Positions 7,236 through 55,944 of a stretch of DNA of 64,000 bases are shown in pieces; positions within the stretch are counted from its first letter, which is position 1; the number at the start of each line of letters is the position of its first letter. Origin of the DNA: Macrostomum lignano (lineage: Eukaryota). The notes beneath the pieces were generated by a model. The model was not told where the DNA came from. It saw only the letters and a program-made list of their open reading frames with translations, and did no database searches. Made by a program: the position numbers and the translations under genes. The stretch covers positions 62,001-126,000 of the forward strand of contig NIVC01001588.1 in assembly GCA_002269645.1 (NCBI GenBank), given 5' to 3'.

Positions 7236-7622
7236 CATTGCTTTCTCTGTTTCAGACAAAAGTTGAAAGTATCGCTCTGAATTACAATGCAACTGCTCGT
7301 CAAATTTTTTCTATTCATTGATCTTCATAAGTCTACTAAAAAACTTTGCTGCATGTGCGACTAGTGAGTCGAAAAGTTTTCTAGATTAATCACTTCGGCA
7401 TCAACTAGTAGCTAGGCTGTAAGCTATGCGAGACCGGTCACAGTCAGACAGTTTGACCAATCGGAAGTCTCCAGTTGAAAGCGGTTATCTCTCAGCTGAT
7501 CATTGGGTTAAACACGGACGAAGTTTAAGCCACAGATACATATAAATGGGCCACCCACCTCTGTGAGGCTGCGCAGAGAGAGATTCGCTATCCAACAGCA
7601 AGCGGCAGGAGCAGCAGCAGCC

Positions 7623-9606
7623 ATGGCCGGCTGCCGTATTGTCCAGCTGTTCGTGGCCAGCACCAGCCTTCGCGGATTCGCCAAGCTGGCCAAGCCGGGC
7701 CAGCAGCCGTTCCTGAGGCTGCTGTGGGCCGGCTTCATCCTGAGCATGCTCTGTGTGCTCAGCCTGAGCTGCTACTCGCTAATGTTCGAGTACTTTCAGT
7801 ATCACGTGAGCCTGCAGACTGACCAGCTGGTGAAGCACCCCAGCCCGTTTCCCAGCATCACGATCTGCTCGCACCAGCCGTTCTCTAAGCGCGCCGTCAG
7901 CCTGTGGTCGAACGGCACCGCGCCAAGTCCGGCCAACTTCTCCGGCAGGGTGCGAGCCGTGATGCGCGACCTCCTGGCGCAGGGCCGCTACCAGGACGCG
8001 CGCGAGGTCTTCCAGACTGACAGGCTGTCGGGCTACTACCAGAACCTGGAGCACAGCCAGATTGTGCGGCTGGGTCACGACCAGGCCGATCTGCTGCTGT
8101 TCTGCGTGATGCGACACAGTCACAACACCAACCCGTCTGTGGCGCATGAGGACCAGTGCAAGCACCGCGTCAGGCGCATCCTGCACCCACTCTACTTCAA
8201 CTGCTTCGACCTCGAGTTGGCCAAAGATCCCAACTACGTGAGCAGCGTCTCCATGGTGATCTCAGGCGGCGGCCAGATAGAAAGCGGTCTTAGCGACCAG
8301 GTGTACAACCTGTTCGACCAAGCCGCCGGCCTGGTCATCGTGCTGCACGAGCCCGGCACGTACCCGGACACGGACTCGGAGCATTACAAGATCCAGCTGG
8401 GCACTGCTAACACCATTCGCTACACGACTGAGCGGTACGTGCACCACAGATCCCCGAAGACTGACTGCATGCACAACTGGGAGATGCCGTTCGAGGCGCC
8501 GAGGATATCGCAGAACAGCGAGATCGATTTTCACTACACGCAAAGCGCCTGCATTGGCCAGAGGATCAGCCAGTTCATCACCGAGCACTGCAACTGCACG
8601 TCTGCGTTCCACCTCAGCGACAGGAAGATGGACAAGGCCGTTCCATTCTGCAGCCGCTTGCCGGAGGGGGACAGCGTTGCCAGCGCTGAGCAAATGCTGG
8701 CTAGGATCGCCTGCGCCAGGAACATCAGTCTGGAAAAGGTGTACTCGGAGCCGGGGGACCACACCGCCTGCCGACGGAGATGCGTGCGCTGGAGATACTC
8801 GGTGAGCCGCTTCGTCTGTTTCTGCACCGGTTGCTGGTGTCTGCCATGCTTGCTGGTGTCTGCCATGCTTGATGGTGTCTGCCATGCTTGATGGTGTCTG
8901 CCATGCTTGATGGTGTCTGCCATGCTTGATGGTGTCTGCCATGCTTGATGGTGTCTGCCATGCTTGATGGTGTCTGCCATGCTTGATGGTGTCTGCCATG
9001 CTTGCTGGTGTCTGCCATGCTTGATGGTGTCTCTGCCATGCAAACTGCTCAGCCGCTCATGCCCAGGTGGAGCAGTCAAACAGCGACTGGCGCCCGCTGG
9101 GCTCCCAGCTTCGCTGGATGAAGCCCGTCACGGAGATTCTGAGCAAAGCGAACGGAATCGCCATAGCAACGGAGGACGCCAGATTGCTGGAGGATTTCTT
9201 TGCGGACGGAGCCGACGGCAACTGGACAGATGCCAGGTCGGCCTCGGACGAAGGCATGGCCATGGTGACGGTGGTGCGCGAGACCTTCGCCACGATGCAA
9301 CAGTCGGAGAAGCCGGTGATCTCGCCCAGCGCCCTAGTCAGCCGGCTTGGCGGTGTCGGCACCCTGACGCTCGGCGTGACCCTCACCTTCGCGTTCGAGC
9401 TGGTCGAGCTGATCTACTTGGCCGCGGCTGAGGCGCTGTGCGGATCTGCCGGCAGCAACAAAGCAGCTGACGCCGCCGAGGACGACGCTGCGCTGGCTGA
9501 TGGACTGCTGAACGCCATCCGGTCGGAGGGCCTGGCAGTCAGGACGGTGATCGGCGGCGGAGCAGCTGTACAAGCCGAGCCGAAGCTGAACAACAGCTCG
9601 TTGTAG
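7623..9606 (+). CDS. DEG/ENaC (amiloride-sensitive sodium channel family) subunit, 2 coding exons
   Basis: Exon 1 7623-8801 (donor TCG|GTGAGC), exon 2 9067-9606 (acceptor CCCAG|GTG), phase 0. Family motifs: pre-TM1 F.ASTSLRG, TM1 RLLWAGFILSMLCVL, FPSITIC, HPLYFNCF, GLVIVLHEPGTYP, cysteine-rich YTQSAC...CNC...C, TM2 SRLGGVGTLTLGVTLTFAFELVELI. The frame is open upstream to 7563. Confidence 0.9.
8830..9040. repeat. Intronic minisatellite, 19-nt unit GCTTGATGGTGTCTGCCAT
   Basis: Tandem array in the ENaC intron (8802-9066). Confidence 0.95.
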
Positions 9607-11453: not shown

Positions 11454-14237
11454 TCAATCGTAACCTTCGAAAGCTTCCAGAACGTAGGCATTGAAGCTGC
11501 GCCAGTCCTCCGCATAGATATGATGCCCGCACTGCGGCAGCTCGCGGACTCCGCCGACCTGCGTGCTGCCGGCTGGCCTCGCCGACCGGAGCTTCTCGCC
11601 GATGTTCGGCTCGCCGCGGGCTCGTTCCAGACGGTACAGCCGCGAGCGGCCGCCGTAGAGCACTGTGAGGGGCAGCTGGGCCGGCAGCTGGTCGATGCGG
11701 GACAAACAGGGTCGCCTGGCGAAGGCGATCAGGTGGCAGAGGCGGCGGAACCCCGTCTCACCGCTGGGAACCTGCGGTTGGTTCGAGATGGCGGTGTGGT
11801 AAATGGTATGCTGTGTGGTAAATGGGATGCTGTGTGGTAAATGGGATGCTGTGTGGCAAATAGAATGTGATAAACAGGGTGGGATAGAGTGTGGTAAACA
11901 GGGTGGGATAGAGTGTGGTAAACAGGGTGGGATAGAGTGTGGTAAACAGGGTGGGATAGAGTGTGGTAAACAGGGTGGGATAGAGTGTGGTAAACAGGGT
12001 GGGATAGAGTGTGGTAAACAGGGTGGGATAGAGTGTGGTAGACAGGGTGGGATAGAGTGTGGTAAACAGGGTGGGATAGAGTGTGGTAAACAGGGTGGGA
12101 TAGAGTGTGGTAAACAGGGTGGGATAGAGTGTGGTAAACAGGGTGGGATAGAGTGTGGTAAACAGGGTGGGATAGAGTGTGGTAAACAGGGTGGGATAGA
12201 GTGTGGTAAACAGGGTGGGATAGAGTGTGGTAAACAGGGTGGGATAGGGTGATAAACACAACCAAGCCTAATCTGCATCTCACACCTGGGCATTGCAGTG
12301 GTACACATAGTCGAGAACCTCGTCACCGCTGGACTTGCCGCCGACCCAGCCGCTGCTGCCGTCTCCGTCATCCTCGAAGAAGTTTCTCAGGTCGCCGCGC
12401 AGTCGGCGGACCAGGCCGGGACCGAACGGGCCGGCGGCGCGCAGGAGGTCGAGCGGGTCCAGCCGCCAGTAGTCCATGACCGACGCGATCCGGCGGAGCA
12501 GCGGCGGCGGCTCGTAGCCGGGAGGCGGCGGCAGCATGCCCCACGGATCGGCGAGCAGCAGGTGCGCCACCGAGGCCGGATACTTGGCTGAGTAGCAGAA
12601 CGCCAGGTAGCCGCCGAAGCTGTGCCCGACAACCAGCAGGCCTTCGGGCAGGCCGGCGGCCAGCCGCCACTGCTCGATGGAATCAACGAATCGGGCTTCG
12701 CAGGCGGCCGCGTCCAGGGGGAACGGCACGCGGCTGCTGCGGCCGAAGCCGAGAATGTCTATGGCATAAACTGGGCGCTGCCGGCTCAGCTGCCCGATGT
12801 TGCGGCACCAGATGCCCACCGCGGCGCCCATGCCGTGCAGCAGCAGCAGCGGGCGGCGCCGCGCGTATGCAACCGGATCGGCGCCAGGCGCCGTGGCGCG
12901 CAAAGTTCGAATTTCGGCGCCGCAGGGCAGCATGACGAAGCTGCAGTCCAGCTCGCAGTCTGAGATGCCTGCGGATGGGTGGCGGAGCGGATCTCCTGTC
13001 GCACCCTTCATTCTCAGCTCAAGCCGTAGCTAGTCACTCTATCCATCTCCCACTCTCTACCTGACCTGTCATTCCTTTGACTCCTGCTTCACTCCCTTCA
13101 CTCCTGTGTCACTCCCTTCACTCCTGTGTCACTCCCTTCACTCCTGTGTCACTCTCTTCACTCATGTGTCACTTACTTCACTCCTGTGTCACTCCCTTCA
13201 CTCCTGTGTCACTCCCTTCACTCCTGTGTCACTCCCTTCACTCCTGTGTCACTCCCTTCACTCCTGTGTCACTCCCTTCACTCCTGTGTCACTCCCTTCA
13301 CTCCTGTGTCACTCCCTTCACTCCTGTGTCACTCCCTTCACTCCTGTGTCACTCCCTTCACTCCTGTGTCACTCCCTTCACTCATGTGTCACTTACTTCA
13401 CCCCTGTGTCACTCCCTTCACTCGTGTCACTCCCTTCACTCCTGTGTCACTCCCTTCACTCATGTGTCACTCCCTTCACTCATGTGTCACTTACTTCACC
13501 TCTGTATCACTCCCTTCACTCTTGTGTCACTCCATTCACCCCTGTGTCACTCCCTTCACTCCTGTGTCACTCCCTTCACTCATGTGTCACTCCCTTTAGT
13601 ACTGTGTCACTCCATTCACTCCTGTGTCACTCCATTCACTCCTGTGTGACTCCCTTCACTCGTGCGTCACTCCATTCACTTTGTCTCACTCCCTTCTTTC
13701 CTGCCTCACCGGCTTCACTCTTGTATCACTCCATTCATTCCTGTGTCACTCCCTTCACTCCTGTGTCACTCACTTCACTCCTGTGTCACTCACTTCACTC
13801 CTGTGTCACTCACTTCACTCCTGTGTCACTCACTTCACTCCTGTGTCATTACTTCACTCCTGTGTCACTCCCTTCACTCCTGTATCACTAAATTCACTTC
13901 TGCCTCACTCGCTTCACTCTTGTGTCACTCGCTTCATTCCTGTGTCACTCCATTCTCTCATGTGTCACTAAATTCAGCACTTCGTCACTCCCTTCAGCAC
14001 CTTGTCACCCTCGCACTGGCAAAGCGGTCACTCACGGTTCAGCACCAAAGCCTCAGCGTAAGCCAACGAAAATGAGGAAGTTGGCCGCCAATAGTGCGGC
14101 AGCCAAGAGTGGCTGCTGGCCACCGAGCTGGCGCTCTCGTGAATCAGCAGCGCTCCTTCGTGCGCGTCTCCGTCTCGATTTACGGCGCTGCCTGATGCAG
14201 ACTCAGCCGAGACTTTGGTTGAATTCGGCGTCGCCAT
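11454..14237 (-). CDS. ABHD4: ABHD4-like alpha/beta hydrolase, paralogue 1, 3 coding exons
   Basis: Exons 14237-14036, 12968-12286 and 11771-11454 join in frame (phases 1,0). Motifs: SWLPHYWRPTS..LAYAEALVL, LLLLHGMGAAVGIW, IDILGFGRSSR, nucleophile elbow GHSFGGY (Ser, so ABHD4-type; vertebrate ABHD5 has Asn), LADPWG, YHCNAQ.PSGETGF, HHIYAED (HX4D). Orthology within the ABHD4/5 group is not resolved. Confidence 0.88.
11800..12250. repeat. Intronic minisatellite, 24-nt unit GGGATAGAGTGTGGTAAACAGGGT
   Basis: Fills intron 2 of ABHD paralogue 1. Confidence 0.95.
13075..13990. repeat. Intronic minisatellite, 20-nt unit CTCCTGTGTCACTCCCTTCA
   Basis: Fills intron 1 of ABHD paralogue 1 and degenerates to the right. 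Confidence 0.95.
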
Positions 14238-15766: not shown

Positions 15767-18200
15767 TCAAACTCCCTGGCTCTCGTCTTGCACCAGCTTA
15801 TTGAACTGATTGAAGTCCTCGGCGTACAGATGGTGATTGCAATTGCGCATGCAGCGAACAGTCACCGGCCCGCGACGCGGCCCGAGTCGTTCCCGAAATT
15901 CCTCCGCCAGATCCGGCGCGTCGGCCGGCCGTCCGTAGCGGAACAGCCAGCTCCGGCCGCCGTAGATTAGCGACACGGGCAGGCGGGGCTCCAGCTGCGG
16001 CAGGCGGGGATAGAGAGGGCGCTTGGCGAATCCCAGCGGAGCGGCCAGGTAGCGGAAGCCGGTCTCTCCGCTGGCCGGCTGGGCATTGCAGTGGTAAATG
16101 TAATCCAGAATGTCGTGGGCGCGCTCCACCGACTCCGGATTTGTGGCCGCCTCCGCCGTCGCGGCCACGTCGTCCTTATCGTCGTCAAAGTACGCCTGTG
16201 AGAGCGGCGGCGATGGAGAAATGAGAACGATATCGAGGTTTCGGACGCGGGAAGATTATTGGAAAGGGCGAGATTTTTGGACGGGGTGAGTCTCGGACAG
16301 AAAATTTTGTAGAGATAGTTTTCGGACAGTTGAATTACGGACAGGTAGGTTTCGGACAGGTAGGTTTCGGACATGTAAATTTCGAATACGAGGGTAGACT
16401 TCGGACAGGTAAGTAAATTTCGGACATGTAGATTTTCGACAGGTAGATTTCGGATAGGTAGATTTCGGACACGTAGACTTCGGACGGGTAAATTTCGAAC
16501 AGGTAAATTTCGGACAGGTAGGTAGATTTTGGACACGTCAATTTTAGACAGGGTAGATTTTGGACAGGTAGATTTCGGACAGGTATATTTCGGACAGGTA
16601 GATTTTGGAGAGGTAGATTTCGGACAGGTAGATGTCGGACAGGTAAATTTCGAACAGGTAAATTTCGGACAGGTAGGTAGATTTTGGACACGTCGATTTT
16701 AGACAGGGTAGATATTGGACAGGTAGATTTCGGACAGGTAGATTTCGGACAGGTAGATTTCGGACAGGTAGATTTCAGACAGCGGTAGATTTGACGCACC
16801 TGAATGTCGCCCCGGAATCGGCGAATCAGCGATGGTCCAAACGGGCCAGCCGCGCGCACCACGGCGAGCGGGTCAAACCGGTGCAGCAGGTTGCCAACGA
16901 CGCTGATCCAGCGACGCGACGGCTGATGATTGTCCGGCCGCTCCAGCAGGCCCCACGGGTCGGCCAAAATCAGCTTTCGAACCGAATTCGGATGTCGAAG
17001 CGCGTAATTAAAAGCCAAATAGCCGCCGAAGCTGTGCCCGAGCAGGATGACTTCGTTGAGTCCTTCGGCTTTGCGCCATTCTTCTATTGAACGAACGAAG
17101 GCGGATTCGCACAGCTCCGGGTTGGCCGGAAATGCCACCCGACTGCTGCGGCCGAAGCCCAGCAAATCCACAGCGTAGACTGGGCGCTGCCTGGCCAGCG
17201 GGCCGAAGTTTTTGCACCACATGCCGACACCAGCGCCCATGCCATGCAGCAGCACAATGGGCGTCCGGGACAGGTAGCCGGCGTCCTGGCCGACTGTGGC
17301 TCGGACTGTCCGAATCTCTTCGCCACCGGGTAAGCGGACAAATTTTGCTTCTAAATCGCAGTCTTGAACGCCTGTAGGGAGAATTTGAAAACCGGATGTC
17401 TACCAACTCTGGCAGCGATATCTTAATTCCAGGTCCCAATCTGCAATCCCAGGACCCAATCTGCAATCCTAGGTCCCAATCTGCAATCCCAGGTCCCAAT
17501 CTGCAATCTCAGGACCCAATCTGCAATCTCAGGACCCAATCTGCAATCCCAGGACCCAATCTGCAATCCCAGGTCCCAATCTGCAATCCCAGGTCCCAAT
17601 CTGCAATCCCAAGTCCCAATCTGCAATCCCAGGTCCCAATCTGCAATCCCAGGCCCCAATCTGCAATTCCAGGCCCCAATCTGCAATCCCAGGCCCCAAT
17701 CTGCAATCCCAGGCCCCAATCTGCAATCCCAGGCCCCAATCTGCAATCCCAGGACCCAATCTACAATCCCAGGTCCCAATCTGCAATCCCAGGTTACAAT
17801 CTACAATCCAAGGTCCCAATCTACAATTCCAGGTCCCAGTTTGCAATCTCAGGTCCCAATTTATAATCCTAGGTCACAATCTGCAAATTCCAAGTCAAGT
17901 CTTAAATCCCTAAACCCCAAAAAATCCTATCTGTAGACCCCAAAAAACTAACCTATAAATCCCAAGTCAAGTTCCAATCTACAAATCCTAGACTATGATC
18001 AATGAAATCCCACATTTACCTAACTGAAAATACTTGTACTTGTAAACAAAATTGTGCTTTCTTTTTCAATAACAGTTGCAACACTTACGCTGCAAGACAA
18101 TTTCTTCTGCATAAGCCAGAGCAAAGCTATTTGTAGGCCGCCAATGCCATGGTAGTAGGTGGCGATAAGTGCAAGCTTTGGATGACAATGAAGGCAGCAT
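15767..18200 (-). CDS. ABHD4: ABHD4-like alpha/beta hydrolase, paralogue 2, 3 coding exons
   Basis: Exons 18200-18089 (MLPSL...PWHWRPTNSFALAYAEEIVLQ, not in the ORF track), 17370-16800 and 16195-15767 join in frame (phases 1,0). Motifs: IVLLHGMGAGVGMW, VDLLGFGRSSR, GHSFGGY, LADPWG, YHCNAQPASGETGF, HHLYAED. Confidence 0.88.
16335..16785. repeat. Intronic minisatellite, about 15-nt unit GGACAGGTAGATTTC
   Basis: Fills intron 2 of ABHD paralogue 2. Confidence 0.9.
17428..17885. repeat. Intronic minisatellite, 20-nt unit CTGCAATCCCAGGTCCCAAT
   Basis: In intron 1 of ABHD paralogue 2. Confidence 0.95.
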
Positions 18201-20875: not shown

Positions 20876-20917
20876 GCCGTAAGACGGTCTCTTACTGCGA
20901 ACTTAATTTATTGCATG
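20876..20917 (+). other. Flatworm-type spliced-leader (SL) exon sequence with no downstream splice donor
   Basis: GCCGTAAGACGGTCTCTTACTGCGAACTTAATTTATTGCATG shows the flatworm SL hallmarks: a 5' CCGT-loop-ACGG hairpin and a 3' TTGCATG. It is close to the Macrostomum lignano SL as I recall it (GCCGTAAAGACGGTCTCTTACTGCGAAGACTCAATTTATTGCATG; from memory, needs checking). It is followed by TTGCAG, not GT, and I see no Sm site after it. Confidence 0.8.
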
Positions 20918-23318
20918 TTGCAGTCTATTTGAACTCTCGTTGAGCGTTTAAATAGCTCCATCGCCTGCTAGCATGCTAGCGGTGCGTTGCAAGGCCTCAA
21001 CGGAGAGCTGCGCTTCTGTTACGGCTGCCAAGAGCGGTACAACCATCCACTCGGCAAGTTAGCGCCGACGCATAGAGCGGCACCGTGAGCGAAATCGCCG
21101 TGGTGCGACCCCTCCTAACTGGCTGTGCGGATCCGCTGGGTGGCGCCGGGACCATGAGGTTCAAAATCACCGGACCCCAGCCGAACCAAAATGCGCACAG
21201 CAACAGCTCAGAATTGCTATCTGGAACTTCCGAACTCTGAGAGCAAAGTGGAGAAAACATCTTTTGGCCCAGCTCGCAGGTGACCTACAACTTGGCATAT
21301 TTATGCTGCAAGAGCTATCCATCACGGCCGAGCCTGGGCTCCACCAGGAGCACTTAAGGAGCGGCTGGCTCCTGCAGTACACATCAGCAGACTCGAAAAG
21401 ACAGGAAGAAATCGGCGTTCTAACCGGGGCCAAAGCTTCAGCAAAGTACACGTTGTGAGAGCCTGCCACCGCGGTTATTGCGCCTCGACATTCGACTCCG
21501 CGTAACATGCGGCTCTTCTGTGCCTATGCGCCCCAAGCTGCGCACCCAGTAGAGCACCGGCAGTTCCTGGAGTTCCTGTCAGCGCAGCTAGATAAGACCG
21601 CTCAACGTGACACTGTACTGGTACTCGGAGACCTCAACGTCGTCATGCGAAGGTCCGAGCGCTCCCACTTCGTAACGCCACGCGAAAATAACAATACTAA
21701 TGCCCTACTGGATTTCATAGACCGCCACGACATTGTCTCAGCAAACACGCTGTTCAGGAAGCCGCTTCAAAGATTGGCAACGTTTGCTGACAGTAAACGG
21801 GCACGTCGAAAAGCGTGTGGAAAATTCGCTAGGAAGAGACCGCACAGCTCGATCACGTGCTGTTTCGCCAGCGAGAACGACGACGAGTGACCAACTGCGA
21901 CCAACTGCTCCGCTGGCAGTGCGGTCAGACCACTGGCTGCTCTATTGTGACCTGCGCCTGAGGGACCCGTATTCTACCAGCGAAAACAGCCAAAGCGCTA
22001 CTTCCGCGCCGTACGCGACCCGGTTACAAGTGGCCGCTTCTGCCTGGCATTTGCCGAGGCGCTGGAAGGACGATCAGACACAACAACCCCAGCCCGGACA
22101 TCAGTGCCGCCATCCAAGCCGCCGCTAACAAAACTCTGCCGCTGGTGAAGCCAGTAGAAAAGAGTCCGCCAGTGTGGCTGCGGCAGGCCCGACTGACAGT
22201 GGAGAGACTGTGGAGGAGCGGTCAGCTTTAGGAGAAGGAAGAGGAGACTCTAGCGGAGAAATTTAAAGCCCGGCAACGCGCCGCGGTAGAGACCGCTATT
22301 CAGGAGATCACAGACGCCGGTCCCCACAAGAAACCGTGTGCCTTCTGGTCGGTCGTCAATCAACTGACAGGCCGCAAGAGACGCAACGCTCTGAACCTGG
22401 CGGGTGACACGTCCGAAGAGAGGCGAAACGAGCTGCGGACCTTCTTCTCCGCAGCCGTAAAGGGACATGTCATTGCCCACGGAAGCTGCGCTGCCAGAGG
22501 AGAGCTACTTTAACACCAGCCCCATCACCATCGATGAGGTGCTTCAACTTGCAAAGAAGACGCTGGGCAACAAAGCCACTGGACACGACAATGTCCACAA
22601 TGTGCTGCGCCTCTCGCAGGTCGCGTTGGAATTCATGCCAGTGATGAAGCTGGTGCCACGCACCTACTGAGTGACGGACTGCGCATATCGTCGGGATCCC
22701 AAAGAAACCAGGCTCCGTCAAGATCGAAGAGCATCGCGGGATTTCACTAAATCCTGCATGGCTAAAGCTGTTTAACAGGGTTCTGCTGTCGCGGCTTTAA
22801 ACACCAAAAAGACAATGGTGCTGACCGTGCCGACAGACCTCCCAGCTAGCTGAAATCTACTGCCGCTGCACGAACGGGCAGGTGGCGTTGCTGCCCCGCT
22901 GCAAAGAGTTCGTCTACCTCGGCGGTCTTGTACCTTTAAGGTAAGGTAAGGACGACATGACACGGCGCAGGGTGCATGCCTGGGGCGCATTCTGCACCGT
23001 GCAGACTGTCCTGCAGTGCCCCATGCTGTCGGATCGGCTACGAAGATGGCTCTTCCAGGCAGTCATAGAAACCTCTACAATGCTGAAACGAGGACACTGA
23101 CCGGCCCGCAGAAGCGGCAACTGGACTTCTGCGAGCCGCCTTCGGTGTCCACTCAAGGACCACTAGAAGTTACTTGTGTCCACTATTCGCCGACCGCCAC
23201 CTGCACCACTGCATGCACCAGGAATGACGGCCCAGCAGCTCTCCCGATCCAGCCAGCTCCTGCGCTTCCGGCGCCTACAGCTGGCCGGCCACGTCATCCG
23301 CAAGGACAACTGAAGTAG
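20918..23318 (+). mobile_element. Decayed non-LTR retrotransposon (APE endonuclease plus reverse transcriptase, RTE-like)
   Basis: APE motifs spread over frameshifts: LRIAIWNFRTL (about 21207), MLQE, AYAP, VLVLGDLN, QLDHVL, VRSDHWLL. RT motifs: NKATGHD, IPKK, HRGISL..KLFNRVLLSRL, NTKKTMV, FVYLGG, LYNAET, RLQLAGHVIR (about 23300). The RT core with YADD appears deleted between RVLLSRL and NTKKT. No 3' tail was found. Confidence 0.85.
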
Positions 23319-24280
23319 AAGGACGCAACACTCGAAATCTTTGGTAAATGTTTTGAAGGCAACTTTTCGCCGAAAAATACACTACAGAGATAGGAGGCTT
23401 CAATTTTTTCAGCACAAAAATTGTTATTGCTTTTGATATGAGGCAGATCCAGTGTTCATCTTTTGATATTTTGTGCCTTTCTTATTGCTCCATCGATATT
23501 CATAATATCGATATTCATAATATTCATCGATTGCCCTGAGCCGCTGCAGGATGTGCTGCTGCTGTCCCTTTAAGGGCCGCGGCGTCTTGGTCAGGCGAGG
23601 TGATCTCGAAGTCTCCGTTAATTTGACAGCTGCTTCTAAGATTACGCTGAGATTTCTGACCCTCGCGGACTCGCTTGCGCGCGCTTTTTGACAGCAATCT
23701 AGTGATGAGGACGCACCTTTTTTCAATCTTAGAACCGCACATTTTGCTTCGATGCGCTTTTCCCCTACTGTCAGTAGGCTAGCTTAGGAATTGCTCTCCA
23801 TTCTCTCATCTAGGTTAAGTTCTATACTATTTTATGCCATTACTATTAGTTATGTTAGAAACTCAATGTATTTCTCTTAGGATTCTAATTTTGGGATTGT
23901 TTATGCATCTTTGAAGGTCAGACTGTCTGGGTTTGAGACGGATTGACCTCTTGCAGTCTAGACAGGCGACACTAAGTCTTGGAGGGACGTTTTCAACCTT
24001 GTTCTGACCCCCAGATTTGTGGCTTTTTTACTGTTCTCAGTGATTTATGGCCGTCTAGCTGTCACTTTTGGCTCCCGCCTGTCTGGGTCAAAGAGGTCTT
24101 TCCAGCTTTCTCCCCACTCGCTCTGTAGCTTTCTCCTTTGATTTATGGGCGTTTTGCTGTCACTTTTGGCGCCAGGATGTCTAGACAAGTTGTTTTGCTT
24201 ATGATTTATGACCGCACCTGTCAACTTCCCTGGGGTCTGAAGGCCACCTGGTGGGGTGGGTTTTGGGGCCTTGAGCTCAG

Positions 24281-24412
24281 CCAATCAGAGTTGACCTGAC
24301 TGCCCCCGGCTCGACCAATCAGAAAATTCGGCGCCTATTTTAACAAAAGCTCTCAGCCAATCGGAAAATTCGGCGTGCGTTATAACAAATCGGCCGCGTG
24401 AGAGCTATAAAA
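24281..24412 (+). promoter_or_regulatory. Pol II promoter-like module: three CCAAT boxes plus TATAAAA (orphan promoter or LTR U3)
   Basis: CCAAT at 24281, 24315 and 24357; duplicated CCAATC(A/G)GAAAATTCGGCG; TATAAAA at 24406-24412; GC-rich island in an AT-rich background. No associated ORF was found. Confidence 0.4.
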
Positions 24413-26183
24413 GGCGGCAACTCGACCCGCGCTCGAGAAAAAAGGGCACTTTCCCCCGGCCAAACTGGAGAGCGGACCCTGGTCCTCCTCTTCTGGTCCT
24501 GCCGACCTGATCGGTCCCCGGCAGTTTCGGCTTCAACAGCTAAGTTCCCCCTGAGAAGCATCATCAACATCTCCCGGCAGTGATCTAAGAGCAGCAACGA
24601 CTATCGGCAAGTGAAGAGCAGCGGCGGCAATCGTCAGTCAAGATCAGCAGCAGCATCCCACCTAAGCGCTTCGGTCTCTGTGGATTCCTTGGCTACCGGC
24701 AGATAGGTCCTCTGATTGGTTTGGTGAGAGGCTCTCCTGACCTGCTTAACTGGATGCACCCTTTGTCTGACCCCTTCCTAGGTAGTCTGATAGGATTTGC
24801 ACTTTTGCTTACTTGCTTTTGTGTGCCAATCTCGAGGCAGAAGTGTCAGTTAATATTAAAAATAGCCATTTGCTCTACACTGTAAACTCCAGGGGTCCGA
24901 AAAAAGGTCCGATAGGGGTCCGTATGTTGCTGTATATACTGCAGTACAGCATTAAATCCCCATTTTCATATCGCTCCAGAGGAAAAATTACGAACAATAA
25001 AATTGTCGATTTGCGAGTCTTAAATTTTTTGCCCAGACTGGCCAGAGTTTCGACTAACATTTAACTAGTACAATGCCTAGCTGTCTCTTAATTATATAAA
25101 ATGCTCCCTATACAATAATTATCGCATACCGAGTATATTTTCGTAAATAAATTTAGTAGAATAAAGAATAATTTCAGTAATAAAATATTAGAATAAAACC
25201 TATAATATTAGTTACAATAATAATTACATATTACAACCATATTAAGAATGTTATAACTCAATCTAAAGTGTCTAGGATTGCGGATTAAGTGAGAAAGTTA
25301 AATTTGGAAGTTAAAGACTTAGCGTTTTCTTTCTTTTTCGCAATGCCAGCTGAGATGAGCGGCTAAATCTAGAGGCAGAGGTCACGGTGGACCGGAAGCG
25401 GCACAGTTCTCAGTCAATCAGTCAATCCCAGAAATCATTATGTTAAGCATGCAAATTAAGAGCCAGACTGGCGCTTTGGCGCGGTCACAGGCAGTTAAGC
25501 GGCACGACATTAAGTTAAATTAAGTTAAATTAAATTGACTAAACATTAAGTTAAGTAAGTTAAATATTAGTCTAAAGATCTCCGAAAGTGACAATGCATC
25601 TACATCATCGCTATCTGTCGAAGTGTTAACACATTTAGTGCCAAAAGCGTGCAGTTACGTGTACTTATACATGTACTTCTGGGAATTTGGTAATGAAATA
25701 GTACATTTAGTAGTGTATGAAGGCTCGCCAGCGCAAGAACCCCCTGCAGAAGTCCTCTCTGTCCCTGCATGGCCAATGCGATCCTAGTCCCAGCAGCGTC
25801 CCTTCTATTCGGCTATGACTTCGAGATTTAGACAGCTAAAAGACACTAGATGGCAGGTAAGTGCAATGCCCCTCTAGTCGCAAGTCCGATTTCGATAGCT
25901 CCGGTTTGGTGAGCCGGGGCGCACGGACTGGTGGCAGCGAGTTAGTTAATCTGCGGATTAGCTAATCTCTACCTTTCAAATTCTCCCTGCTTGTCTCTCG
26001 CTGTCTTCTCCTAGCTATAGGACCTTGCTGCTCGCCCACAATCTAGCTACCATGGGGCTGACCATCTGACAGGAGTGAGAGGCCAGAGCTCTTAGTGATT
26101 CATTTCTGAGTTCTGAGGCCCGAAGCTACAGGCTTAAAAAGGCCGAACCCATCACTAGCTTGGCTTGTCCAGGGCTGCTACTT

Positions 26184-30596: not shown

Positions 30597-33500
30597 AAGG
30601 GAATTATTGCCAATACGCCTAAGCGGCTGCGCGACCTGATCAGAGAGATCAGGGCTGCTAAAACTGCCGCCGAGGAGAGAGCCGTTGTTAACAGGGAATG
30701 CGCCCAGATTCGCGATAGCTTCCGCGAGGAGGACAATGCCTATAGGCTAGTTGCTATGGATTTATTAATTATGTGGCTTGCAGTTATTTTTGTCCTGTTA
30801 TGTCCCTATCTCTCAGATAAGCTATCATCTGTCCTTTGGCAAAAGCACCCATCTCTCCCCGTAAGATACCCCATCTCTGCCTGTAAGACACCCCATCTCT
30901 GTCTGTAAGACACCCCATCTCTGCCTGTAAGACACCCATCTCTGCCTGTAAGACATCCATCTCTGCCTGTAAGACACCCCATCTCTGTCTGTAAGACACC
31001 CCATCTCTGTCTGTAAGACACCTCATCTCTCTCTGTAAGACACCCCATCTCTCTCTGTAAGACACCCCATCTCTCACTGTAAGACACCCATCTTTACCTG
31101 TAAGACACCCATCTTTACCTGTAAGACACCAATCTCTCACTGTAAGACACCCATCTTTACCTGTAAGACACCCATCTTTACCTGTAAGACACCCATCTTT
31201 ACCTGTAAGACACCCATCTCTGCCTGTAAGACACCAATCTCTCACTGTAAGACACCCATCTTTACCTGTAAGACACCAATCTCTCACTGTAAGACACCCA
31301 TCTCTGCCTGTAAGACACCCATCTCTGCCTGTAAGACACCCCATCTCTCCCTGTAAGACACCCATCTCTGCCTGTAGGACATCCATCTCTGCCTGTAAGA
31401 CACCCCATCTCTGTCTGTAAGACACCCCATCTCTCACTGTAAGACACCCATCTCTGTCTGTAAGACACCCCATCTCTGTCTGTAAGACACCCCATCTCTC
31501 ACTGTAAGACACCCATCTCTGTCTGTAAGACACCCCATCTCTCTCTGTAAGACACCCCATCTCACTGTAAGACACCCATCTTTACCTGTAAGATACCCAT
31601 CTCTGCCTGTAAGACACCCATCTCTGCCTGTAAGACACTCATCTCTGCCTGTAAGACACCCCATCTCTCACTGTAAGACACCCATCTTTACCTGTAAGAT
31701 ACCCATCTCTGCCTGTAAGACACCCATCTCTGCCTGTAAGACACTCATCTCTGCCTGTAAGACACTCATCTCTGCCTGTAAGACACCCCATCTCTCACTG
31801 TAAGACACCCATCTTTACCTGTAAGACACCCATCTTTACCTGTAAGACACCAATCTCTCACTGTAAGACACCTATCTTTACCTGTAAGACACCCCATCTC
31901 ACTGTAAGGCACCCATCTTTACCTTTAAGACACCCATCTCTGCCTGTAAGACACATATCTTTACCTGTAAGACACCCATCTCTGCCTGTAAGACACCCAT
32001 CTCTGCCTGTAAGACACATATCTTTACCTGTAAGACACCCATCTCTGCCTGTAAGACACCCATCTCTGCCTGTAAGACACCCCATCTCTCTCTGTAAGAC
32101 ACCCATCTCTGCCTGTAGGACATCCATCTCTGCCTGTAAGACATCCATCTCTCTCTGTAAGACACCCCATCTCTCACTGTAAGACACCCATCTTTACCTG
32201 TAAGACACCCATCTTTACCTGTAAGACACCCATCTTTACCTGTAAGACACCCATCTTTACCTGTAAGACACCCATCTCTGCCTGTAAGACACCAATCTCT
32301 CACTGTAAGACACCCATCTTTACCTGTAAGACACCAATCTCTCACTGTAAGACACCCATCTCTGCCTGTAAGACACCCATCTCTGCCTGTAAGACACCCA
32401 TCTCTGCCTGTAAGACACCCCATCTCTCCCTGTAAGACACCCCATCTCTCACTGTAAGACACCCATCTCTGTCTGTAAGACACCCCATCTCTGTCTGTAA
32501 GACACCCCATCTCTCACTGTAAGACACCCATCTCTGTCTGTAAGACACCCCATCTCTCTCTGTAAGACACCCCATCTCACTGTAAGACACCCATCTTTAC
32601 CTGTAAGATACCCATCTCTGCCTGTAAGACACCCATCTCTGCCTGTAAGACACTCATCTCTGCCTGTAAGACACCCCATCTCTCACTGTAAGACACCCAT
32701 CTTTACCTGTAAGACACCAATCTCTCACTGTAAGACACCCATCTTTACCTGTAAGACACCCCATCTCACTGTAAGGCACCCATCTTTACCTTTAAGACAC
32801 CCATCTCTGCCTGTAAGACACATATCTTTACCTGTAAGACACCCATCTCTGCCTGTAAGACACCCATCTCTGCCTGTAAGACACATATCTTTACCTGTAA
32901 GACACCCATCTCTGCCTGTAAGACACCCATCTCTGCCTGTAAGACACCCCATCTCTCTCTGTAAGACACCCATCTCTGTCTGTAAGACACCCCATCTCTG
33001 TCTGTAAGACACCCCATCTCTCACTATAAGACACCCATCTCTGTCTGTAAGACACCCCATCTCTCTCTGTAAGACACCCCATCTCACTGTAAGACACCCA
33101 TCTTTACCTGTAAGATACCCATCTCTGCCTGTAAGACACCCATCTCTGCCTGTAAGACACTCATCTCTGCCTGTAAGACACCCCATCTCTCACTGTAAGA
33201 CACCCATCTTTACCTGTAAGACACCCATCTTTACCTGTAAGACACCAATCTCTCACTGTAAGACACCCATCTTTACCTGTAAGACACCCCATCTCACTGT
33301 AAGGCACCCATCTTTACCTTTAAGACACCCATCTCTGCCTGTAAGACACATATCTTTACCTGTAAGACACCCATCTCTGCCTGTAAGACACCCATCTCTG
33401 CCTGTAAGACACATATCTTTACCTGTAAGACACCCATCTCTGCCTGTAAGACACCCATCTCTGCCTGTAAGACACCCCATCTCTCTCTGTAAGACACCCA

Positions 33501-36500
33501 TCTCTGCCTGTAGGACATCCATCTCTGCCTGTAAGACATCCATCTCTCCCTGTAAGACACCCATCTCTGTCTGTAAGACATCCATCTCTCCCTGTAAGAC
33601 ACCCCATCTCTCTCTGTAAGACACCCATGTCAGCATCCATCTAAACTTCAATCACAAGAAGCGGCACCATCCTCCATCCAGGTGCCGCAATGTGGCCAAG
33701 CTGCTGTACATCCACATGCTGGGCTATCCGGCCCACTTTGGCCAAATGGAATGCCTCAAACTGGTAGCGTCGCCAAAATTTTCGGACAAACGCATTGGCT
33801 ACCTGGGCGCTATGCTATTGTTAGACGAGAGGGCCGAGGTTCACCTATTGGTGACAAATTCGGTTAAGAACGACATGAACCACAGCACACAGTACATCGC
33901 TAGTCTGGCCCTGTCCACGCTAGGCAGCATCTGCAGTCCCGAGATGAGTCGAGATTTAGCCGGCGAAGTGCAGGCACTAATCAAGTCGAACAACGCTTAT
34001 TTGCGCAAAAAAGCTGCGTTATGCGCTCTGCGCATCATACAGAAGATCCCGGACATCATGGAGATGTACATCCCGTGTGCCAGGTCTTTGCTCAACGAAA
34101 AAAATCACGGTACTTTTTCGCGTTTTGTTGTCAACCTTTTTGTTATAACATATCATTAGATCTGAGGTCCTGAAATCCGAGTACCAGATGAGATCCATCC
34201 GGGGTCCTGAAATCCGAGTGCCAGATGAGATCCAGGGTCCTGAAATCCGAGTGCCAGATGAGATCCAGGGTCCTGAAATCAGGTTGCCAGATGAGATCCA
34301 GGGTCCTGAAATCAGGTTGCCAGATGAGATCCATCCAGGGTCCTGAAATCCGAGTGCCAGATGAGATCCAGGGTCCTGAAATCAGAGTGCCAGATGAGAT
34401 CCATCCGGGGTCCTGAAATCTGAGTGCCAGATGAGATCCAGGGTCCTGAAATCCAGTGCCAGATGAGATCCAGGGTCCTGAAATCAGGTTGCCAGATGAG
34501 ATCCATCCAGGGTCCTGAAATCCGAGTGCCAGATGAGATCCAGGGTCCTGAAATCAGAGTGCCAGATGAGATCCATCCGGGGTCCTGAAATCCGAGTGCC
34601 AGATGAGATCCAGGGTCCTGAAATCAGGTTGCCAGATGAGATCCATCCAGGGTCCTGAAATCCGAGTGCCAGATGAGATCCAGGGTCCTGAAATCAGATT
34701 GCAAAGAACTAAAGTACTTTCTGTTTTCTTCCTTGCAGGTGTTCTATTGACCGCCGTCTGCCTGATCTCGCAGATGTGCCAGCTTAGCCCGGAGACACTT
34801 AACCACTTCCGAAGGGTGAGCAATGCTCGTCAGATATAATAGTTTTACTCTCTAATTGTAAATGAAAGCCCTAACCAGATAATGTATTTAAAACCTTACT
34901 GCATCTATGCATACTGCATACATCGATCAGTGGTTCTAATGAGGGAAGTAAACTCACTCGAATTAATCATTAAGTGAGCGAAATCCTTTTTCACCTGCTA
35001 CTGCTAACTATCAATTATAAATTAATTAGGACGGATCTGCTGAGGTAAATTATTCAATTATTGTTTTTAATTAGTTTCGATGGTGTCTGGGTTTTCGTAT
35101 GCAAAAGTGTCGACCTTGTTTTTGAGGTTGTATTGGTATTTGAATGAGTATTACTTGGCAGTTGTTGGGTGAAGCGTTTTGTCACGTTGCACCTCAAATC
35201 AGGCAGATGGCAAATAACGTCTCCGATCTTTAGATTTTACTTCTCCTGTTCATAAATAACTCAAGATAAAACAATTTAAAACATTTGTCACACAATCTAA
35301 CCATTCCCAACCCAATCCAACCCACCAAAACCCAATCCAACCCACCAAAACCCAATCCAACCCACCAAAACCCAATCCAACCCACCAAAACCCAATCCAA
35401 CCCACCAAAACCCAATCCAACCCACCAAAACCCAATCCAACCCACCAAAACCCAATCCAACCCACCATATCAATCTAACCATTCCCAACCCAATCCAACC
35501 CACCATATCAATCTAACCATTCCCAACCCAATCCAACCCACCATATCAATCTAACCATTCCCAACCCAATCCAACCCACCCGAACACAATCTAGCCATTG
35601 TAGAACCAGTCCAACTAATATAAACCCAATCCACTTCAAAAACCTTTCTAATTCTCACGTACAGAGTTTCACTTCAAAAAATATTTCACTAATTATGATG
35701 TGCCAGAATGATTTGATTTCAGTTTAAGCTTAAACAAATAATTACTTAAGGTATTTCCATAGTCAATATTTCAATTCCTCAATGTTCCACAGCTGGTGCC
35801 CAACCTGGTCCGGATCCTGAAGAATCTGATCATGTCCGGCTTCTCTCAGGATCACGATGTCAACGGCGTTAGCGACCCGTTTTTGCAAGTGAAAATTCTG
35901 CAATTGTTGCGCATTCTGGGCCACCAGGACTCTGCGGCCAGTGAGCAGATGAATGACATCCTTGCTCAGGTGAGATGATGATTTCATCTGTTATATGAAT
36001 AGATTATGACTCTTGTTTGAGTGTGTAATAGTCATAGTCACGACTACCCTAAATTTGGTGACTGGGTGGGTCATGACCCTCAACTTGCTGATTGAGTGGG
36101 TCATGACCCTCAACTTGCTGATTGAGTGGGTCATGACTCTCAAATTGCTGATTGAGTGGGTCATGACTCAAATTGCTGATTGAGTGGGTCATGACTCAAA
36201 TTTCTGATTGAGTGGGTCATGACCCTCAAATTGCTGATTGAGTGGGTCATGACTCAAATTGCTGATTGAGTGGGGCATGACTCAAATTGCTGATTGAGTG
36301 GGGCATGACCCTCAAATTGCTGATTGAGTGGGTCATGACTCTCAAATTGCTGATTGAGTGGGTCATGACTCAAATTGCTGATTGAGTGGGTCATGACTCA
36401 AATTTCTGATTGAGTGGGTCATGACCCTCAAATTGCTGATTGAGTGGGTCATGACTCAAATTGCTGATTGAGTGGGGCATGACTCAAATTGCTGATTGAG

Positions 36501-39500: not shown

Positions 39501-40046
39501 TCACTCAATCTCCCGTCACTCCAATCCCCGTCACTCCAATCTTCGTCACTCCAATCTTCGTCACTCCAATCCCCGTCACTCCAATCTCCCGTCACTCCAA
39601 TCCCCGTCACTCCAATCTTCGTCACTCCAATCTTCGTCACTCCAATCTCTCCAATCAATATCACTAATCAATATCTCTGTAACTTCTCTTGTTCTAGGGC
39701 TCTCGACAACCACTATCTTTATCTCATTGAACTCTCCCAGTGTCTGAATTCTCCCTCTGGGTATTTCTCATGTCTTCTGTCCCTCATTCGATTCCCTCTC
39801 GATCGCCCACGCCAGAGACGACGTGGTGGTGGCGGCCGTCCAGCTGATCAGCGAGCAGTCGGCCTACCAGGCCTACGCTGTTCACCAGCTGTTTTACTAC
39901 GCTAGCCAGGACTTCAGCCAGCAGCCAATGGTGCTGCTGGCCTGCTGGTGCATCGGCGAGTACGGCGGCGGGCTGTTCAGCGACTGCTGCGCCGATGGAC
40001 TGGAGACTTATTCGGTGAGGGACTGGGTTGGCTGTTCTAGGCGGAC

Positions 40047-55908: not shown

Positions 55909-55944
55909 AGCAGCTGCTGTCTTCTAGAGGAAAGTTTTGCTTGG

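What the first reader, a model, noticed from the sequence alone, without database searches (positions are those of the whole stretch)
20876..23318. Complete spliced-leader exon fused to the 5' end of an RTE-like retrotransposon
Seen: a 42-nt flatworm-type SL ending in TTGCATG sits directly in front of a LINE that runs from 5'UTR through APE into RT. The SL is followed by TTGCAG, with no GT donor or Sm site, so it is not an SL RNA gene. Known: SL trans-splicing adds a capped leader to mRNAs; genomic relict SLs mark retroposed transcripts in other trans-splicing lineages; and some non-LTR elements (NeSL, SLACS/CZAR/CRE, which use restriction-like endonucleases) target SL RNA genes. Inference, preferred: the element's RNA is SL trans-spliced and was copied back full length, so the element uses host trans-splicing for capping and 5' end formation. 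Alternatives: the family permanently carries an SL in its 5'UTR, or this is an APE-type element inserted at the exon/intron junction of an SL gene. This copy is decayed and its 3' end is missing, so the alternatives cannot be separated here.
Basis: partly seen in the sequence, partly recalled or inferred. Interest (0 to 1): 0.82.

Follow-up and report, generated by a model that had tools for sequence, protein, structure and literature searches.

The report
Spliced-leader relic abutting a decayed LINE
A complete but slightly decayed copy of the Macrostomum flatworm spliced leader sits 10 bases in front of an old, broken RTE-like retrotransposon; it is most likely the scar of an element RNA that was trans-spliced before being copied back, but a 10-base repeat that brackets the element without the leader keeps a chance-neighbour explanation alive.

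Summary
Window 20876-20917 is the 45-nt Macrostomum spliced leader (SL) from its first base to its final ATG: 41 bases identical, one substitution, three bases lost in two deletions. It is not an SL RNA gene. Two real SL genes recovered from public data continue ATG|GTAAGACACCG...ATTTTTAG, whereas the window continues TTGCAG and has no intron-like sequence.

Downstream lies one decayed RTE-like LINE: 5' hairpin, degenerate start codon, APE, and an RT with about 207 codons deleted. After a roughly 215-nt insertion the ORF resumes and stops at 23689-23691.

The trans-splicing reading is only partly supported.

- **For:** the SL ends exactly 10 nt before the hairpin arm. Related elements carry 17-nt tandem units ending TTTGCAG there, which matches the published M. 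lignano trans-splice acceptor motif [T/C]TNCAG.
- **Against:** those same 10 nt (TTGCAGTCTA) recur at 23951-23960. That looks like a target-site duplication enclosing the LINE but not the SL, and no duplication encloses the SL.

No second copy could be obtained. A 2025 paper already noted SL fragments next to LINE/LTR elements in parasitic flatworms. My estimates: trans-spliced retrocopy about 0.5, insertion beside a pre-existing SL about 0.3.

The parts
20876..20917 (+). Relic of the complete Macrostomum spliced-leader exon (42 of 45 nt kept; 1 substitution, 2 deletion events), ending in the SL's ATG
20918..20927 (+). TTGCAGTCTA. The 10 nt between the SL and the hairpin arm, equivalent to the 10-nt spacer of the last 17-nt 5' unit in relatives. 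Also the first copy of a perfect 10-nt direct repeat (candidate target-site duplication)
20925..20955 (+). Conserved 5' hairpin of the LINE (CTATTTGAAC / GTTTAAATAG, 10 bp). Relatives have the same hairpin with different, mutually complementary arms
20960..21206 (+). Degenerate start codon (CCAT-CGCC versus CCATGCCGCC in relatives) and the basic N-terminal region of the single ORF (..RRRIERHRERNRRG..), with frameshifts
21207..21969 (+). Apurinic/apyrimidinic-type endonuclease domain, interrupted by a stop and a frameshift
21970..22463 (+). Linker between APE and RT, homologous to P0001-P0004 and P0009
22464..22797 (+). N-terminal part of the reverse transcriptase (to ..IVGIPKKPGSVKIEEHRGISL..)
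22798..22857 (+). Junction of an internal deletion that removed the RT core (P0003 residues about 522-727, roughly 207 codons)
22858..23310 (+). C-terminal part of the RT/ORF (P0003 residues 728-870; ..FRRLQLAGHVIRKD)
23312..23531 (.). Roughly 215-nt AT-rich block inserted into the ORF, containing a 15-nt tandem duplication at 23492-23521. Absent from the M. lignano copy P0007 and from P0003
23532..23691 (+). Last part of the ORF (CPEPLQDVLLLSL.. RFLTLADSLARAF) with the stop codon TGA at 23689-23691
23692..23950 (+). 3' UTR and/or flank. The true 3' end of the element is not defined; no recognisable simple-repeat tail
23951..23960 (+). Second copy of TTGCAGTCTA (context CCTCTTGCAG|TCTA). Candidate 3' target-site duplication

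Best explanation
This is an old, dead retrocopy of an RTE-like LINE RNA that had received the host spliced leader by trans-splicing. SHOWN: a full SL exon without donor or intron lies 10 nt upstream of the conserved 5' hairpin, start codon and single ORF of a near full-length APE+RT element. INFERRED: the parent copy carried, like its relatives, one or more extra 17-nt 5' units ending in TTTGCAG. A transcript that began upstream, either by read-through or from an upstream unit, was trans-spliced at that CAG. The SL-capped RNA was translated and reverse-transcribed to its very 5' end by target-primed reverse transcription, so the SL became genomic. The copy then decayed. On this reading the 10-mer at 23951 is a chance match.
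For: (1) The SL is complete from the first G to the ATG, and the junction is blunt at the exon end, which is the signature of splicing. (2) The SL ends exactly 10 nt before the hairpin arm. In L003/L017, L004, L005 and L006 the upstream unit ends GCAG (GCGG in L005) exactly 10 nt before the arm, so the SL sits precisely where a unit boundary falls. (3) That boundary reads TTTGCAG|, which fits the trans-splice acceptor motif [T/C]TNCAG reported for M. lignano (PMC8629364). The last unit always reads GCAC, which is not an acceptor and forms part of the hairpin. (4) The last 3 nt of the 10-mer (CTA) pair with TAG in the hairpin, as the equivalent bases do in relatives. At least part of the 10 nt therefore belongs to the LINE. 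(5) The alternative ways of getting an SL there are weak: there is no SL intron anywhere nearby. (6) Precedent: 597 SL-like loci in parasitic flatworms lie next to LINE/LTR elements and were interpreted the same way (PMC12582326). Cer1 of C. elegans has an SL1-trans-spliced mRNA (PMC3315495).
Against: (1) TTGCAGTCTA directly after the SL recurs exactly at 23951-23960. The empirical chance for that one position is 8e-4, or about 0.07 for any 10-mer in the junction region. If it is a target-site duplication, the SL was already in the target. (2) No direct repeat of at least 8 nt ends within 2 nt of the SL's 5' side and recurs after the ORF. (3) There is only one copy, so recurrence of the junction is untested. 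No master copy with an AG at that point was seen in the same genome. (4) The SL carries two deletions in 45 nt against roughly one frameshift per 300 nt in the LINE, although it has only one substitution. (5) Relatives come from unidentified hosts, so it is unknown whether their TTTGCAG units are ever spliced.
Confidence: 0.5

Rival explanations
1. Unrelated juxtaposition. A slightly 5'-truncated LINE inserted by ordinary target-primed reverse transcription into a site lying immediately 3' of a pre-existing genomic SL relic, such as the 5' end of an older retrocopy. TTGCAGTCTA is the target-site duplication, or 7 nt of duplication plus 3 nt of 5' microhomology. The element RNA never carried an SL.
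For: A perfect 10-nt direct repeat starts at the first base after the SL and recurs 260 nt after the ORF stop, a plausible 3' UTR length. The chance is 8e-4 for that position. No duplication encloses SL plus LINE. The SL has more indels than the LINE body would predict for equal age. SL sequences do occur elsewhere in Macrostomum genomic DNA at gene 5' ends (PMC8629364).
Against: This reading needs several coincidences. The nick must fall exactly at the last base of the SL. The duplication length must equal the relatives' invariant 10-nt spacer, so the SL lands on the unit boundary. The CTA of the 'target' must complete the LINE hairpin. The LINE must be truncated by only about 7 nt. The supposed older SL-bearing retrocopy has no recognisable body, tail or duplication of its own, and the sequence after 23960 is the upstream region of a host promoter. 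The region 23692-23950 has no RTE-type tail.
Confidence: 0.3
2. Chimeric retrocopy by template jump. The reverse transcriptase reached the capped 5' end of an ordinary, unspliced LINE RNA at the unit boundary and jumped end-to-end onto the 3' end of a free SL exon (a trans-splicing intermediate). This resembles U6-L1 chimeras.
For: The junction is blunt at both natural RNA ends. Tandem 5' units in relatives, each differing from the last unit by a G at the junction and sharing 1-4 nt of microhomology (ACC/ACC, TCC/TCC), look like products of repeated re-priming after copying a cap G. This suggests the RT is prone to jumps at the 5' end.
Against: The abundant species is the full 109-nt SL RNA, and a jump onto it would bring in the intron, which is absent. 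Free SL exon is a rare, spliceosome-bound intermediate. The 10-mer repeat problem is the same as for the best explanation.
Confidence: 0.08
3. Site-specific insertion. The family targets SL sequences and nicks at the end of the SL exon, in the manner of NeSL/SLACS/CZAR but with an APE.
For: The candidate duplication begins exactly at the SL exon's 3' end.
Against: The sequence after the duplication is not an SL intron. Both real SL genes read GTAAGACACCG..ATTTTTAG there, and similarity scores are no better than for shuffled sequence. Complete 5' junctions of relatives L005, L006, L008 and L019 are not next to this SL.
Confidence: 0.04
4. The SL-like stretch is a permanent, inherited part of the family's 5' UTR, meaning an SL captured once and then propagated.
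For: The relatives' units (for example CTGAATTATTTGCAG) resemble the SL 3' end (CTCAATTTATTGCATG), and MAFFT aligns them.
Against: No relative carries the SL's first 30 nt. The units within each lineage copy that lineage's own last unit, not a common SL. The resemblance lies in AT-rich sequence and was not tested for significance.
Confidence: 0.05

Closest known systems
Relict spliced leaders on retroposed transcripts (dinoflagellate 'recycled cDNAs', Slamovits & Keeling 2008, cited in PMC7789003; dinoflagellate retrogene papers found)
   Same: A genomically encoded SL exon without donor or intron sits at the 5' end of a sequence that was copied from RNA.
   Different: Here the body is an autonomous LINE, not a host gene. 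There is one relic, not a nested series of truncated relics. Retroposition of SL plus body as one unit is not proven, because the only candidate duplication excludes the SL.
SL fragments next to LINE/LTR elements in parasitic flatworm genomes (PMC12582326, Mol Biol Evol 2025)
   Same: Same phylum, same association and same proposed cause: retrotransposon transcripts that received the SL and were integrated.
   Different: That paper reports partial leaders discarded as false SL-gene candidates and gives no junction analysis. Here the leader is complete, the junction is mapped to a conserved 5' unit boundary, and the host is a free-living macrostomid.
Site-specific non-LTR elements of SL RNA genes (NeSL-1, SLACS, CZAR, CRE); knowledge of the field, not tested in a paper here
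   Same: A non-LTR retrotransposon is physically next to SL exon sequence.
   Different: Those elements use a restriction-like endonuclease, insert inside functional SL genes, and are flanked by both halves of the gene. This element has an APE and no SL intron follows it.
5' processing of co-transcribed LINEs by HDV-like ribozymes (R2, some RTE, L1Tc; PMC4035085 listed)
   Same: Conceptually the same problem and solution class: a promoter-poor LINE is released from a host co-transcript by an RNA-processing event at its 5' end.
   Different: No ribozyme was detected (Rfam E<=1). The proposed processing is spliceosomal SL addition, which would also supply a cap.
Cer1 (C. elegans Ty3/gypsy) SL1-trans-spliced subgenomic mRNA (PMC3315495)
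   Same: A retrotransposon RNA serves as a substrate of SL trans-splicing.
   Different: In Cer1 the trans-spliced RNA is a subgenomic message, and the genome-length RNA is not trans-spliced. Here the trans-spliced RNA would itself be the transposition template.

Membership tests
SL RNA gene | [quoted passage not shown] | tested here: met
   20876-20917 matches the 45-nt Macrostomum SL with 41 identities
SL RNA gene | GT splice donor immediately after the exon (GTAAG in Macrostomum) | tested here: not met
   The window has TTGCAG. Real genes L015 and L020 and PMC8629364 have GTAAG
SL RNA gene | Intron part with two hairpins and an Sm-like site (ATTTTTAG) | tested here: not met
   No similarity above shuffled controls to the L015 intron, either in situ or after the 3' 10-mer. 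Rfam has no usable model; it misses even the real gene
RTE-clade non-LTR retrotransposon | N-terminal APE-type endonuclease | tested here: met
   Pfam PF03372, E = 1.8e-5, residues 20-246 of the conceptual translation
RTE-clade non-LTR retrotransposon | Reverse transcriptase downstream in the same ORF | tested here: met
   tblastn to P0003 (PF00078), residues 406-521 and 728-870. The core is deleted in the window copy, and Pfam alone finds nothing there
RTE-clade non-LTR retrotransposon | Single ORF of about 1,000 aa, no separate ORF1, no C-terminal zinc knuckle, element about 3.3 kb, short 3' UTR with a simple-repeat tail | tested here: inconclusive
   Relatives have one ORF from an ATG just after the hairpin through APE and RT. 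The P0003 C-terminus has no CCHC, and L001 has a (TATTTC)4 tail. The window copy is too decayed and its 3' end is undefined
RTE-clade non-LTR retrotransposon | Placement within the RTE clade in an RT phylogeny | not tested
   No reference LINE set was available in the tools used
SL-gene-specific non-LTR elements (NeSL/SLACS/CZAR/CRE) | Restriction-enzyme-like endonuclease C-terminal to the RT | tested here: not met
   The endonuclease is an N-terminal APE
SL-gene-specific non-LTR elements (NeSL/SLACS/CZAR/CRE) | Insertion at a fixed site in SL RNA genes, with the remainder of the gene following the element | tested here: not met
   No SL intron after the element. The relatives' flanks are not this SL
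Retrocopy of an SL-trans-spliced RNA | Complete SL joined bluntly to the transcript body, with no donor or intron | tested here: met
Retrocopy of an SL-trans-spliced RNA | Junction corresponds to an AG acceptor in the source (master) copy | tested here: inconclusive
   No master copy from this genome was available. In relatives the equivalent position follows TTTGCAG, which fits the M. lignano acceptor motif
Retrocopy of an SL-trans-spliced RNA | Target-site duplication enclosing SL plus body | tested here: not met
   None of at least 8 nt was found. The only clean repeat excludes the SL. Decay could have erased a short duplication
Retrocopy of an SL-trans-spliced RNA | Same junction in several independent copies, or SL-element reads in RNA | not testable with these tools
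   The window holds a single copy. The source genome and its RNA-seq are not searchable here. Protein-search and contig look-up caps are exhausted

The most novel reading that the evidence does not exclude
This RTE-like lineage may carry, as an inherited device, a tandem array of 17-nt 5' units that each end in the host's trans-splice acceptor consensus (UUUGCAG|). A promoter-less copy transcribed by read-through would then be cut out of the host transcript and given a capped leader by SL trans-splicing. Spare units would ensure that progeny keep an acceptor. The window copy would be a progeny element spliced at the last available acceptor and so left with none. That would make SL trans-splicing a LINE 5'-end formation strategy, analogous to the HDV-like ribozymes of R2 and some RTE elements.
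Probability: 0.15. Interest if true: 0.8.

Novelty: new member of a known kind. Interest (0 to 1): 0.45.

Why it matters
How LINEs without a strong internal promoter make a defined, capped and translatable 5' end is only partly understood. The known answers are internal promoters and self-cleaving ribozymes. If an APE-type LINE in a trans-splicing animal routinely borrows the host spliced leader, that would be a third answer. Genomic SL relics would then become a convenient tag for full-length retrotransposition events in flatworms, as they are for retrogenes in dinoflagellates.

As it stands, the finding is a single dead copy with an ambiguous duplication, and the general idea has already been voiced for parasitic flatworms. 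There is also a practical point. SL-like hits next to LINEs are false positives in SL-gene searches, and several M. lignano database proteins are read-through translations of decayed copies of this family.

Tried and rejected
- **Other copies in the window:** blastn and tblastn found none. No second SL was found with up to 3 mismatches.
- **Rfam:** nothing at gathering or at E<=1. It also misses the genuine SL gene, so it is uninformative for the SL. No HDV-like ribozyme was found.
- **The search for related loci with an APE alignment on JGI metagenomes:** 496 pattern hits, none confirmed.
- **Source species:** the ASC-channel ORF's best hits are M. lignano paralogues at 35-38% identity. Five exact window ORFs are not in the protein collection. 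There is no DNA similarity to 43 kb of M. lignano genome, and those loci hold no LINE copies. The species stays unresolved: Macrostomum or a close relative.
- **Target-site duplication outside the SL:** none found.
- **Body, poly(A) or duplication of a hypothetical older SL-bearing retrocopy downstream:** none found.
- **Flank tandem repeats reaching upstream of 23951**, which would have disproved the candidate duplication: no significant similarity.
- **3' UTR homology to relative L001:** none. L001 shows no clear duplication either.
- **The post-SL sequence or the reconstituted 'empty site' as a diverged SL intron:** rejected, with z about -0.1 to -0.5 against shuffles.
- **My first reading,** that the TTGCAG after the SL is the tail of a preceding unit, was dropped once the alignment showed a constant 10-nt spacer.
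- **SL 21-mer in IMG/VR:** no hit.
Full report
**1. What is at 20876-20917**

The 42 bases read GCCGTAAGACGGTCTCTTACTGCGAACTTAATTTATTGCATG.

- The M. lignano SL consensus is CCGTAAAGACGGTCTCTTACTGCGAAGACTCAATTTATTGCATG (PMC5173321).
- M. cliftonense gives GCCGTAAAGACGG...GCATG (45 nt), and M. hystrix gives the same sequence minus its first two bases (PMC10468722, supplementary table S3).
- The window copy begins at the same first G and ends at the same ATG. It differs by one lost A in the first hairpin loop, a lost GA, and one C>T (blastn-short E = 1.5e-8).
- It occurs once in the window.

The exon is identical in three species and in two environmental genes (below). The differences are therefore best read as decay or copying error. 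A species-specific SL variant cannot be excluded, because the source species is not identified.

**2. It is not an SL RNA gene**

Scanning public contigs for the SL 3' 21-mer returned:

- five metatranscriptome mRNAs with the SL at their 5' ends;
- two genuine SL RNA genes, L015 (JGI metagenome) and L020 (a contig filed under a Flavobacteriaceae MAG).

Both genes read ..ctttGCCGTAAAGACGG...TTGCATG|GTAAGACACCG..GATCCAAT..ATTTTTAGCAGCCC... This agrees with the published description of a GTAAG donor and an Sm-like site (PMC8629364). The window has TTGCAG after the ATG. The intron part has no match better than shuffled controls after the SL, after the LINE ORF, or after the candidate 3' boundary. 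Rfam finds nothing, but it also misses the real gene, so that result carries no weight.

**3. The element**

Conceptual translation across frames gives the parts below.

| Part | Window coordinates | Evidence |
|---|---|---|
| Basic N-terminal region (..RRRIERHRERNRRG..) | from ~20960 | |
| APE domain | 21207-21969 | Pfam PF03372, E = 1.8e-5 |
| Linker | 21970-22463 | |
| First part of RT | 22464-22797 | |
| RT C-terminal region | 22858-23310 | |

- About 207 codons of the RT core are deleted between the two RT parts.
- At 23311/12 a roughly 215-nt AT-rich block interrupts the ORF. The M. lignano copy P0007 and the intact relative P0003 run straight through this point (..AGH.IR...YC.EP.QDV..).
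- The ORF resumes at about 23532 and stops at 23689-23691 (RFLTLADSLARAF*, compared with NFIRDLALKRAL* in P0003).
- The nearest named relatives are M. lignano database proteins. These are themselves read-through translations of decayed copies, about 75% identical.
- Intact or near-intact relatives at about 45-50% identity come from metagenomes and SRA assemblies of unknown hosts.
- By architecture the family is RTE-like: one ORF, APE then RT, no zinc knuckle, and a short 3' UTR with a (TATTTC)n tail in L001. I did not make a phylogeny.

**4. The family's 5' end**

Relatives share a distinctive 5' end.

- It consists of a hairpin (..ATTTGCAC-loop-GTGCAAAT..) followed by the ORF's ATG: about 10 nt later in L006 and within 4 nt in the others.
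- The arms differ between lineages but stay complementary. All hairpins fold with z-scores of -3.5 to -5.
- Upstream of the hairpin there are one to five tandem 17-nt units. Each is a copy of the 10-nt spacer plus the 5' arm.
- Every upstream unit ends GCAG (GCGG in L005). The last unit, which forms the hairpin, ends GCAC.
- The distance from GCAG to the arm TTTGCAC is 10 nt in all four lineages.

In the window the hairpin is CTATTTGAAC/GTTTAAATAG (20925-20955). The start codon is degenerate (CCAT-CGCC). Exactly 10 nt (TTGCAGTCTA) separate the arm from the last base of the SL. The SL therefore occupies the place of an upstream unit, and the junction falls on the unit boundary.

That boundary in relatives reads UUUGCAG|. 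This is an instance of the [T/C]TNCAG motif found at M. lignano trans-splice acceptor sites (PMC8629364).

A parent with at least one extra unit would be trans-spliced at that CAG, giving SL|spacer-hairpin-ORF, which is what is seen.

**5. The complication**

A k-mer comparison of the junction region with the sequence after the ORF found TTGCAGTCTA again at 23951-23960.

- Across the window, a 10-mer at a fixed position recurs in the same relative interval with frequency 8e-4.
- For any 10-mer in the roughly 95-nt junction region the expectation is about 0.07.
- The repeat begins at the first base after the SL and lies 260 nt after the stop codon. It therefore has the form of a target-site duplication that encloses the LINE and excludes the SL.
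- In target-primed reverse transcription nothing can be added between the upstream flank and the 5' copy of the duplication. If the repeat is real, the SL was already in the target, and the association is a juxtaposition (or SL-directed targeting).
- No repeat of at least 8 nt ends within 2 nt of the SL's 5' side and recurs downstream.

Arguments against the duplication reading:

- The nick must fall exactly at the SL's last base.
- The length must equal the relatives' invariant spacer.
- Its last three bases complete the LINE hairpin, though this can be explained as 5' microhomology.
- The region 23692-23950 has no RTE-type tail.
- The supposed older SL-bearing sequence has no body, tail or duplication of its own.
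- What follows 23960 is the upstream region of a host promoter, with three CCAAT boxes and TATAAAAG at about 24276-24416.

I could not disprove the repeat by showing that flank repeats extend across it.

**6. Weighing the explanations**

A rough estimate goes as follows.

- Random LINE 5' ends landing within a few bases of one of the genome's SL relics should be very rare genome-wide.
- SL-tagged retrotransposon copies seem to occur by the dozen per flatworm genome (597 loci over the species surveyed in PMC12582326).
- The 10-mer gives a likelihood ratio of perhaps 4 to 25 in favour of juxtaposition. That erodes the prior advantage of trans-splicing but does not overturn it.

| Explanation | Estimated probability |
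|---|---|
| Retrocopy of a trans-spliced LINE RNA | about 0.5 |
| Juxtaposition beside a pre-existing SL | about 0.3 |
| End-to-end template jump onto a free SL exon | about 0.08 |
| SL-directed insertion, and an inherited SL-derived 5' UTR | about 0.04-0.05 each |

These numbers are judgement, not computation.

**7. A side observation on the relatives' arrays**

The G that distinguishes upstream units from the last unit, together with 1-4 nt of identity between the start of a unit and the bases after the last unit (ACC/ACC in L006, TCC/TCC in L004), has a second possible cause. The RT may copy the cap G and then re-prime 17 nt downstream. That would create TTGCAG acceptor-like sites as a by-product, without selection. 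It would also imply the RNA normally starts, capped, at a unit boundary. Both ideas predict the same sequences, and I could not separate them.

**8. What could not be done**

- No other copy from the same genome could be reached.
- The window's ORFs are not in the protein collection.
- The species is unresolved: best gene hits are M. lignano paralogues at 35-38% identity, and there are no shared repeats with 43 kb of M. lignano DNA.

**9. Novelty**

Genomic SL relics on retroposed transcripts are well known in dinoflagellates. SL trans-splicing of a retrotransposon mRNA is documented for Cer1 (PMC3315495). SL fragments beside LINE/LTR elements in flatworm genomes were noted, with the same interpretation, in 2025 (PMC12582326). 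This is a new, well-mapped example in a free-living flatworm, not a new kind of thing. The conserved array of acceptor-like 5' units is the part that could lead somewhere new.

Noticed in passing
window 23312-23531: A roughly 215-nt AT-rich block is inserted in the LINE ORF between ..GHVIRKD and CPEPLQDV... It contains a perfect 15-nt tandem duplication (ATCGATATTCATAAT x2, 23492-23521). The M. lignano copy P0007 lacks it. Its nature (small non-autonomous element or filler) is unknown.
   Followed up: partly
L003 1-95, L017 1-52, L004 1-31, L005 ~100-118, L006 1545-1616: Related LINEs carry tandem 17-nt 5' units, each a copy of the element's own 5' spacer plus hairpin arm. Upstream units end GCAG and the last unit ends GCAC. 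There are 1-4 nt of identity between the unit start and the bases after the last unit. Two readings fit: spare trans-splice acceptors, or cap-G copying followed by re-priming by the RT.
   Followed up: partly
L020 1590-1700 (JAGQZA010000190.1): A complete Macrostomum-type SL RNA gene (SL exon, GTAAG donor, ATTTTTAG Sm-like site) lies in a contig deposited as a Flavobacteriaceae MAG. This is almost certainly flatworm contamination of the bin. A second such gene is in the JGI metagenome contig L015 at 615-725. Their stems differ by compensatory changes.
   Followed up: partly
window 20915-20932: The SL's ATG opens a 5-codon upstream ORF (ATG TTG CAG TCT ATT TGA). It lies 45 nt, in phase, upstream of the degenerate LINE start codon.
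   Followed up: no
window 24276-24730: A host promoter-like region lies about 500 nt downstream of the element. It has three CAGCCAATCAGA-type CCAAT boxes at 34 and 42 nt spacing and TATAAAAGG at about 24408, followed by a GC-rich non-coding stretch ending at a GGTGAG donor-like site at about 24723. The LINE lies just upstream of this gene.
   Followed up: no
window, whole (e.g. 30846-33628, 42546-44982, 37927-39649, 6122-7224, 13067-13969, 55942-57044): About 25 separate minisatellite arrays with 15-51-nt units, some with more than 100 copies, cover a large share of the window. Several long 'ORFs' are translations of these arrays. The 21-nt array at 30846-33628 contains GTAAGACACC, identical to the first 10 nt of the SL intron. 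Matches of that length are expected by chance.
   Followed up: partly
window 7563-8891 (+), 12280-13011 (-), 16335-17255 (-), 40505-41410 (+): Host coding exons: an amiloride-sensitive sodium channel (ASC) ORF of 442 aa, two paralogous alpha/beta-hydrolase exons, and an adaptin C-terminal exon. The ASC ORF is only 35-38% identical to its best M. lignano hits, so the source may be another Macrostomum species or an unannotated paralogue.
   Followed up: partly
P0006, P0007, P0014, P0015, P0016 (UniRef, M. lignano): Several M. lignano database 'proteins' (named reverse transcriptase, DUF4780-containing, peptidase A2-containing and so on) are partly off-frame read-through translations of decayed copies of this LINE family. 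They are annotation artefacts.
   Followed up: partly
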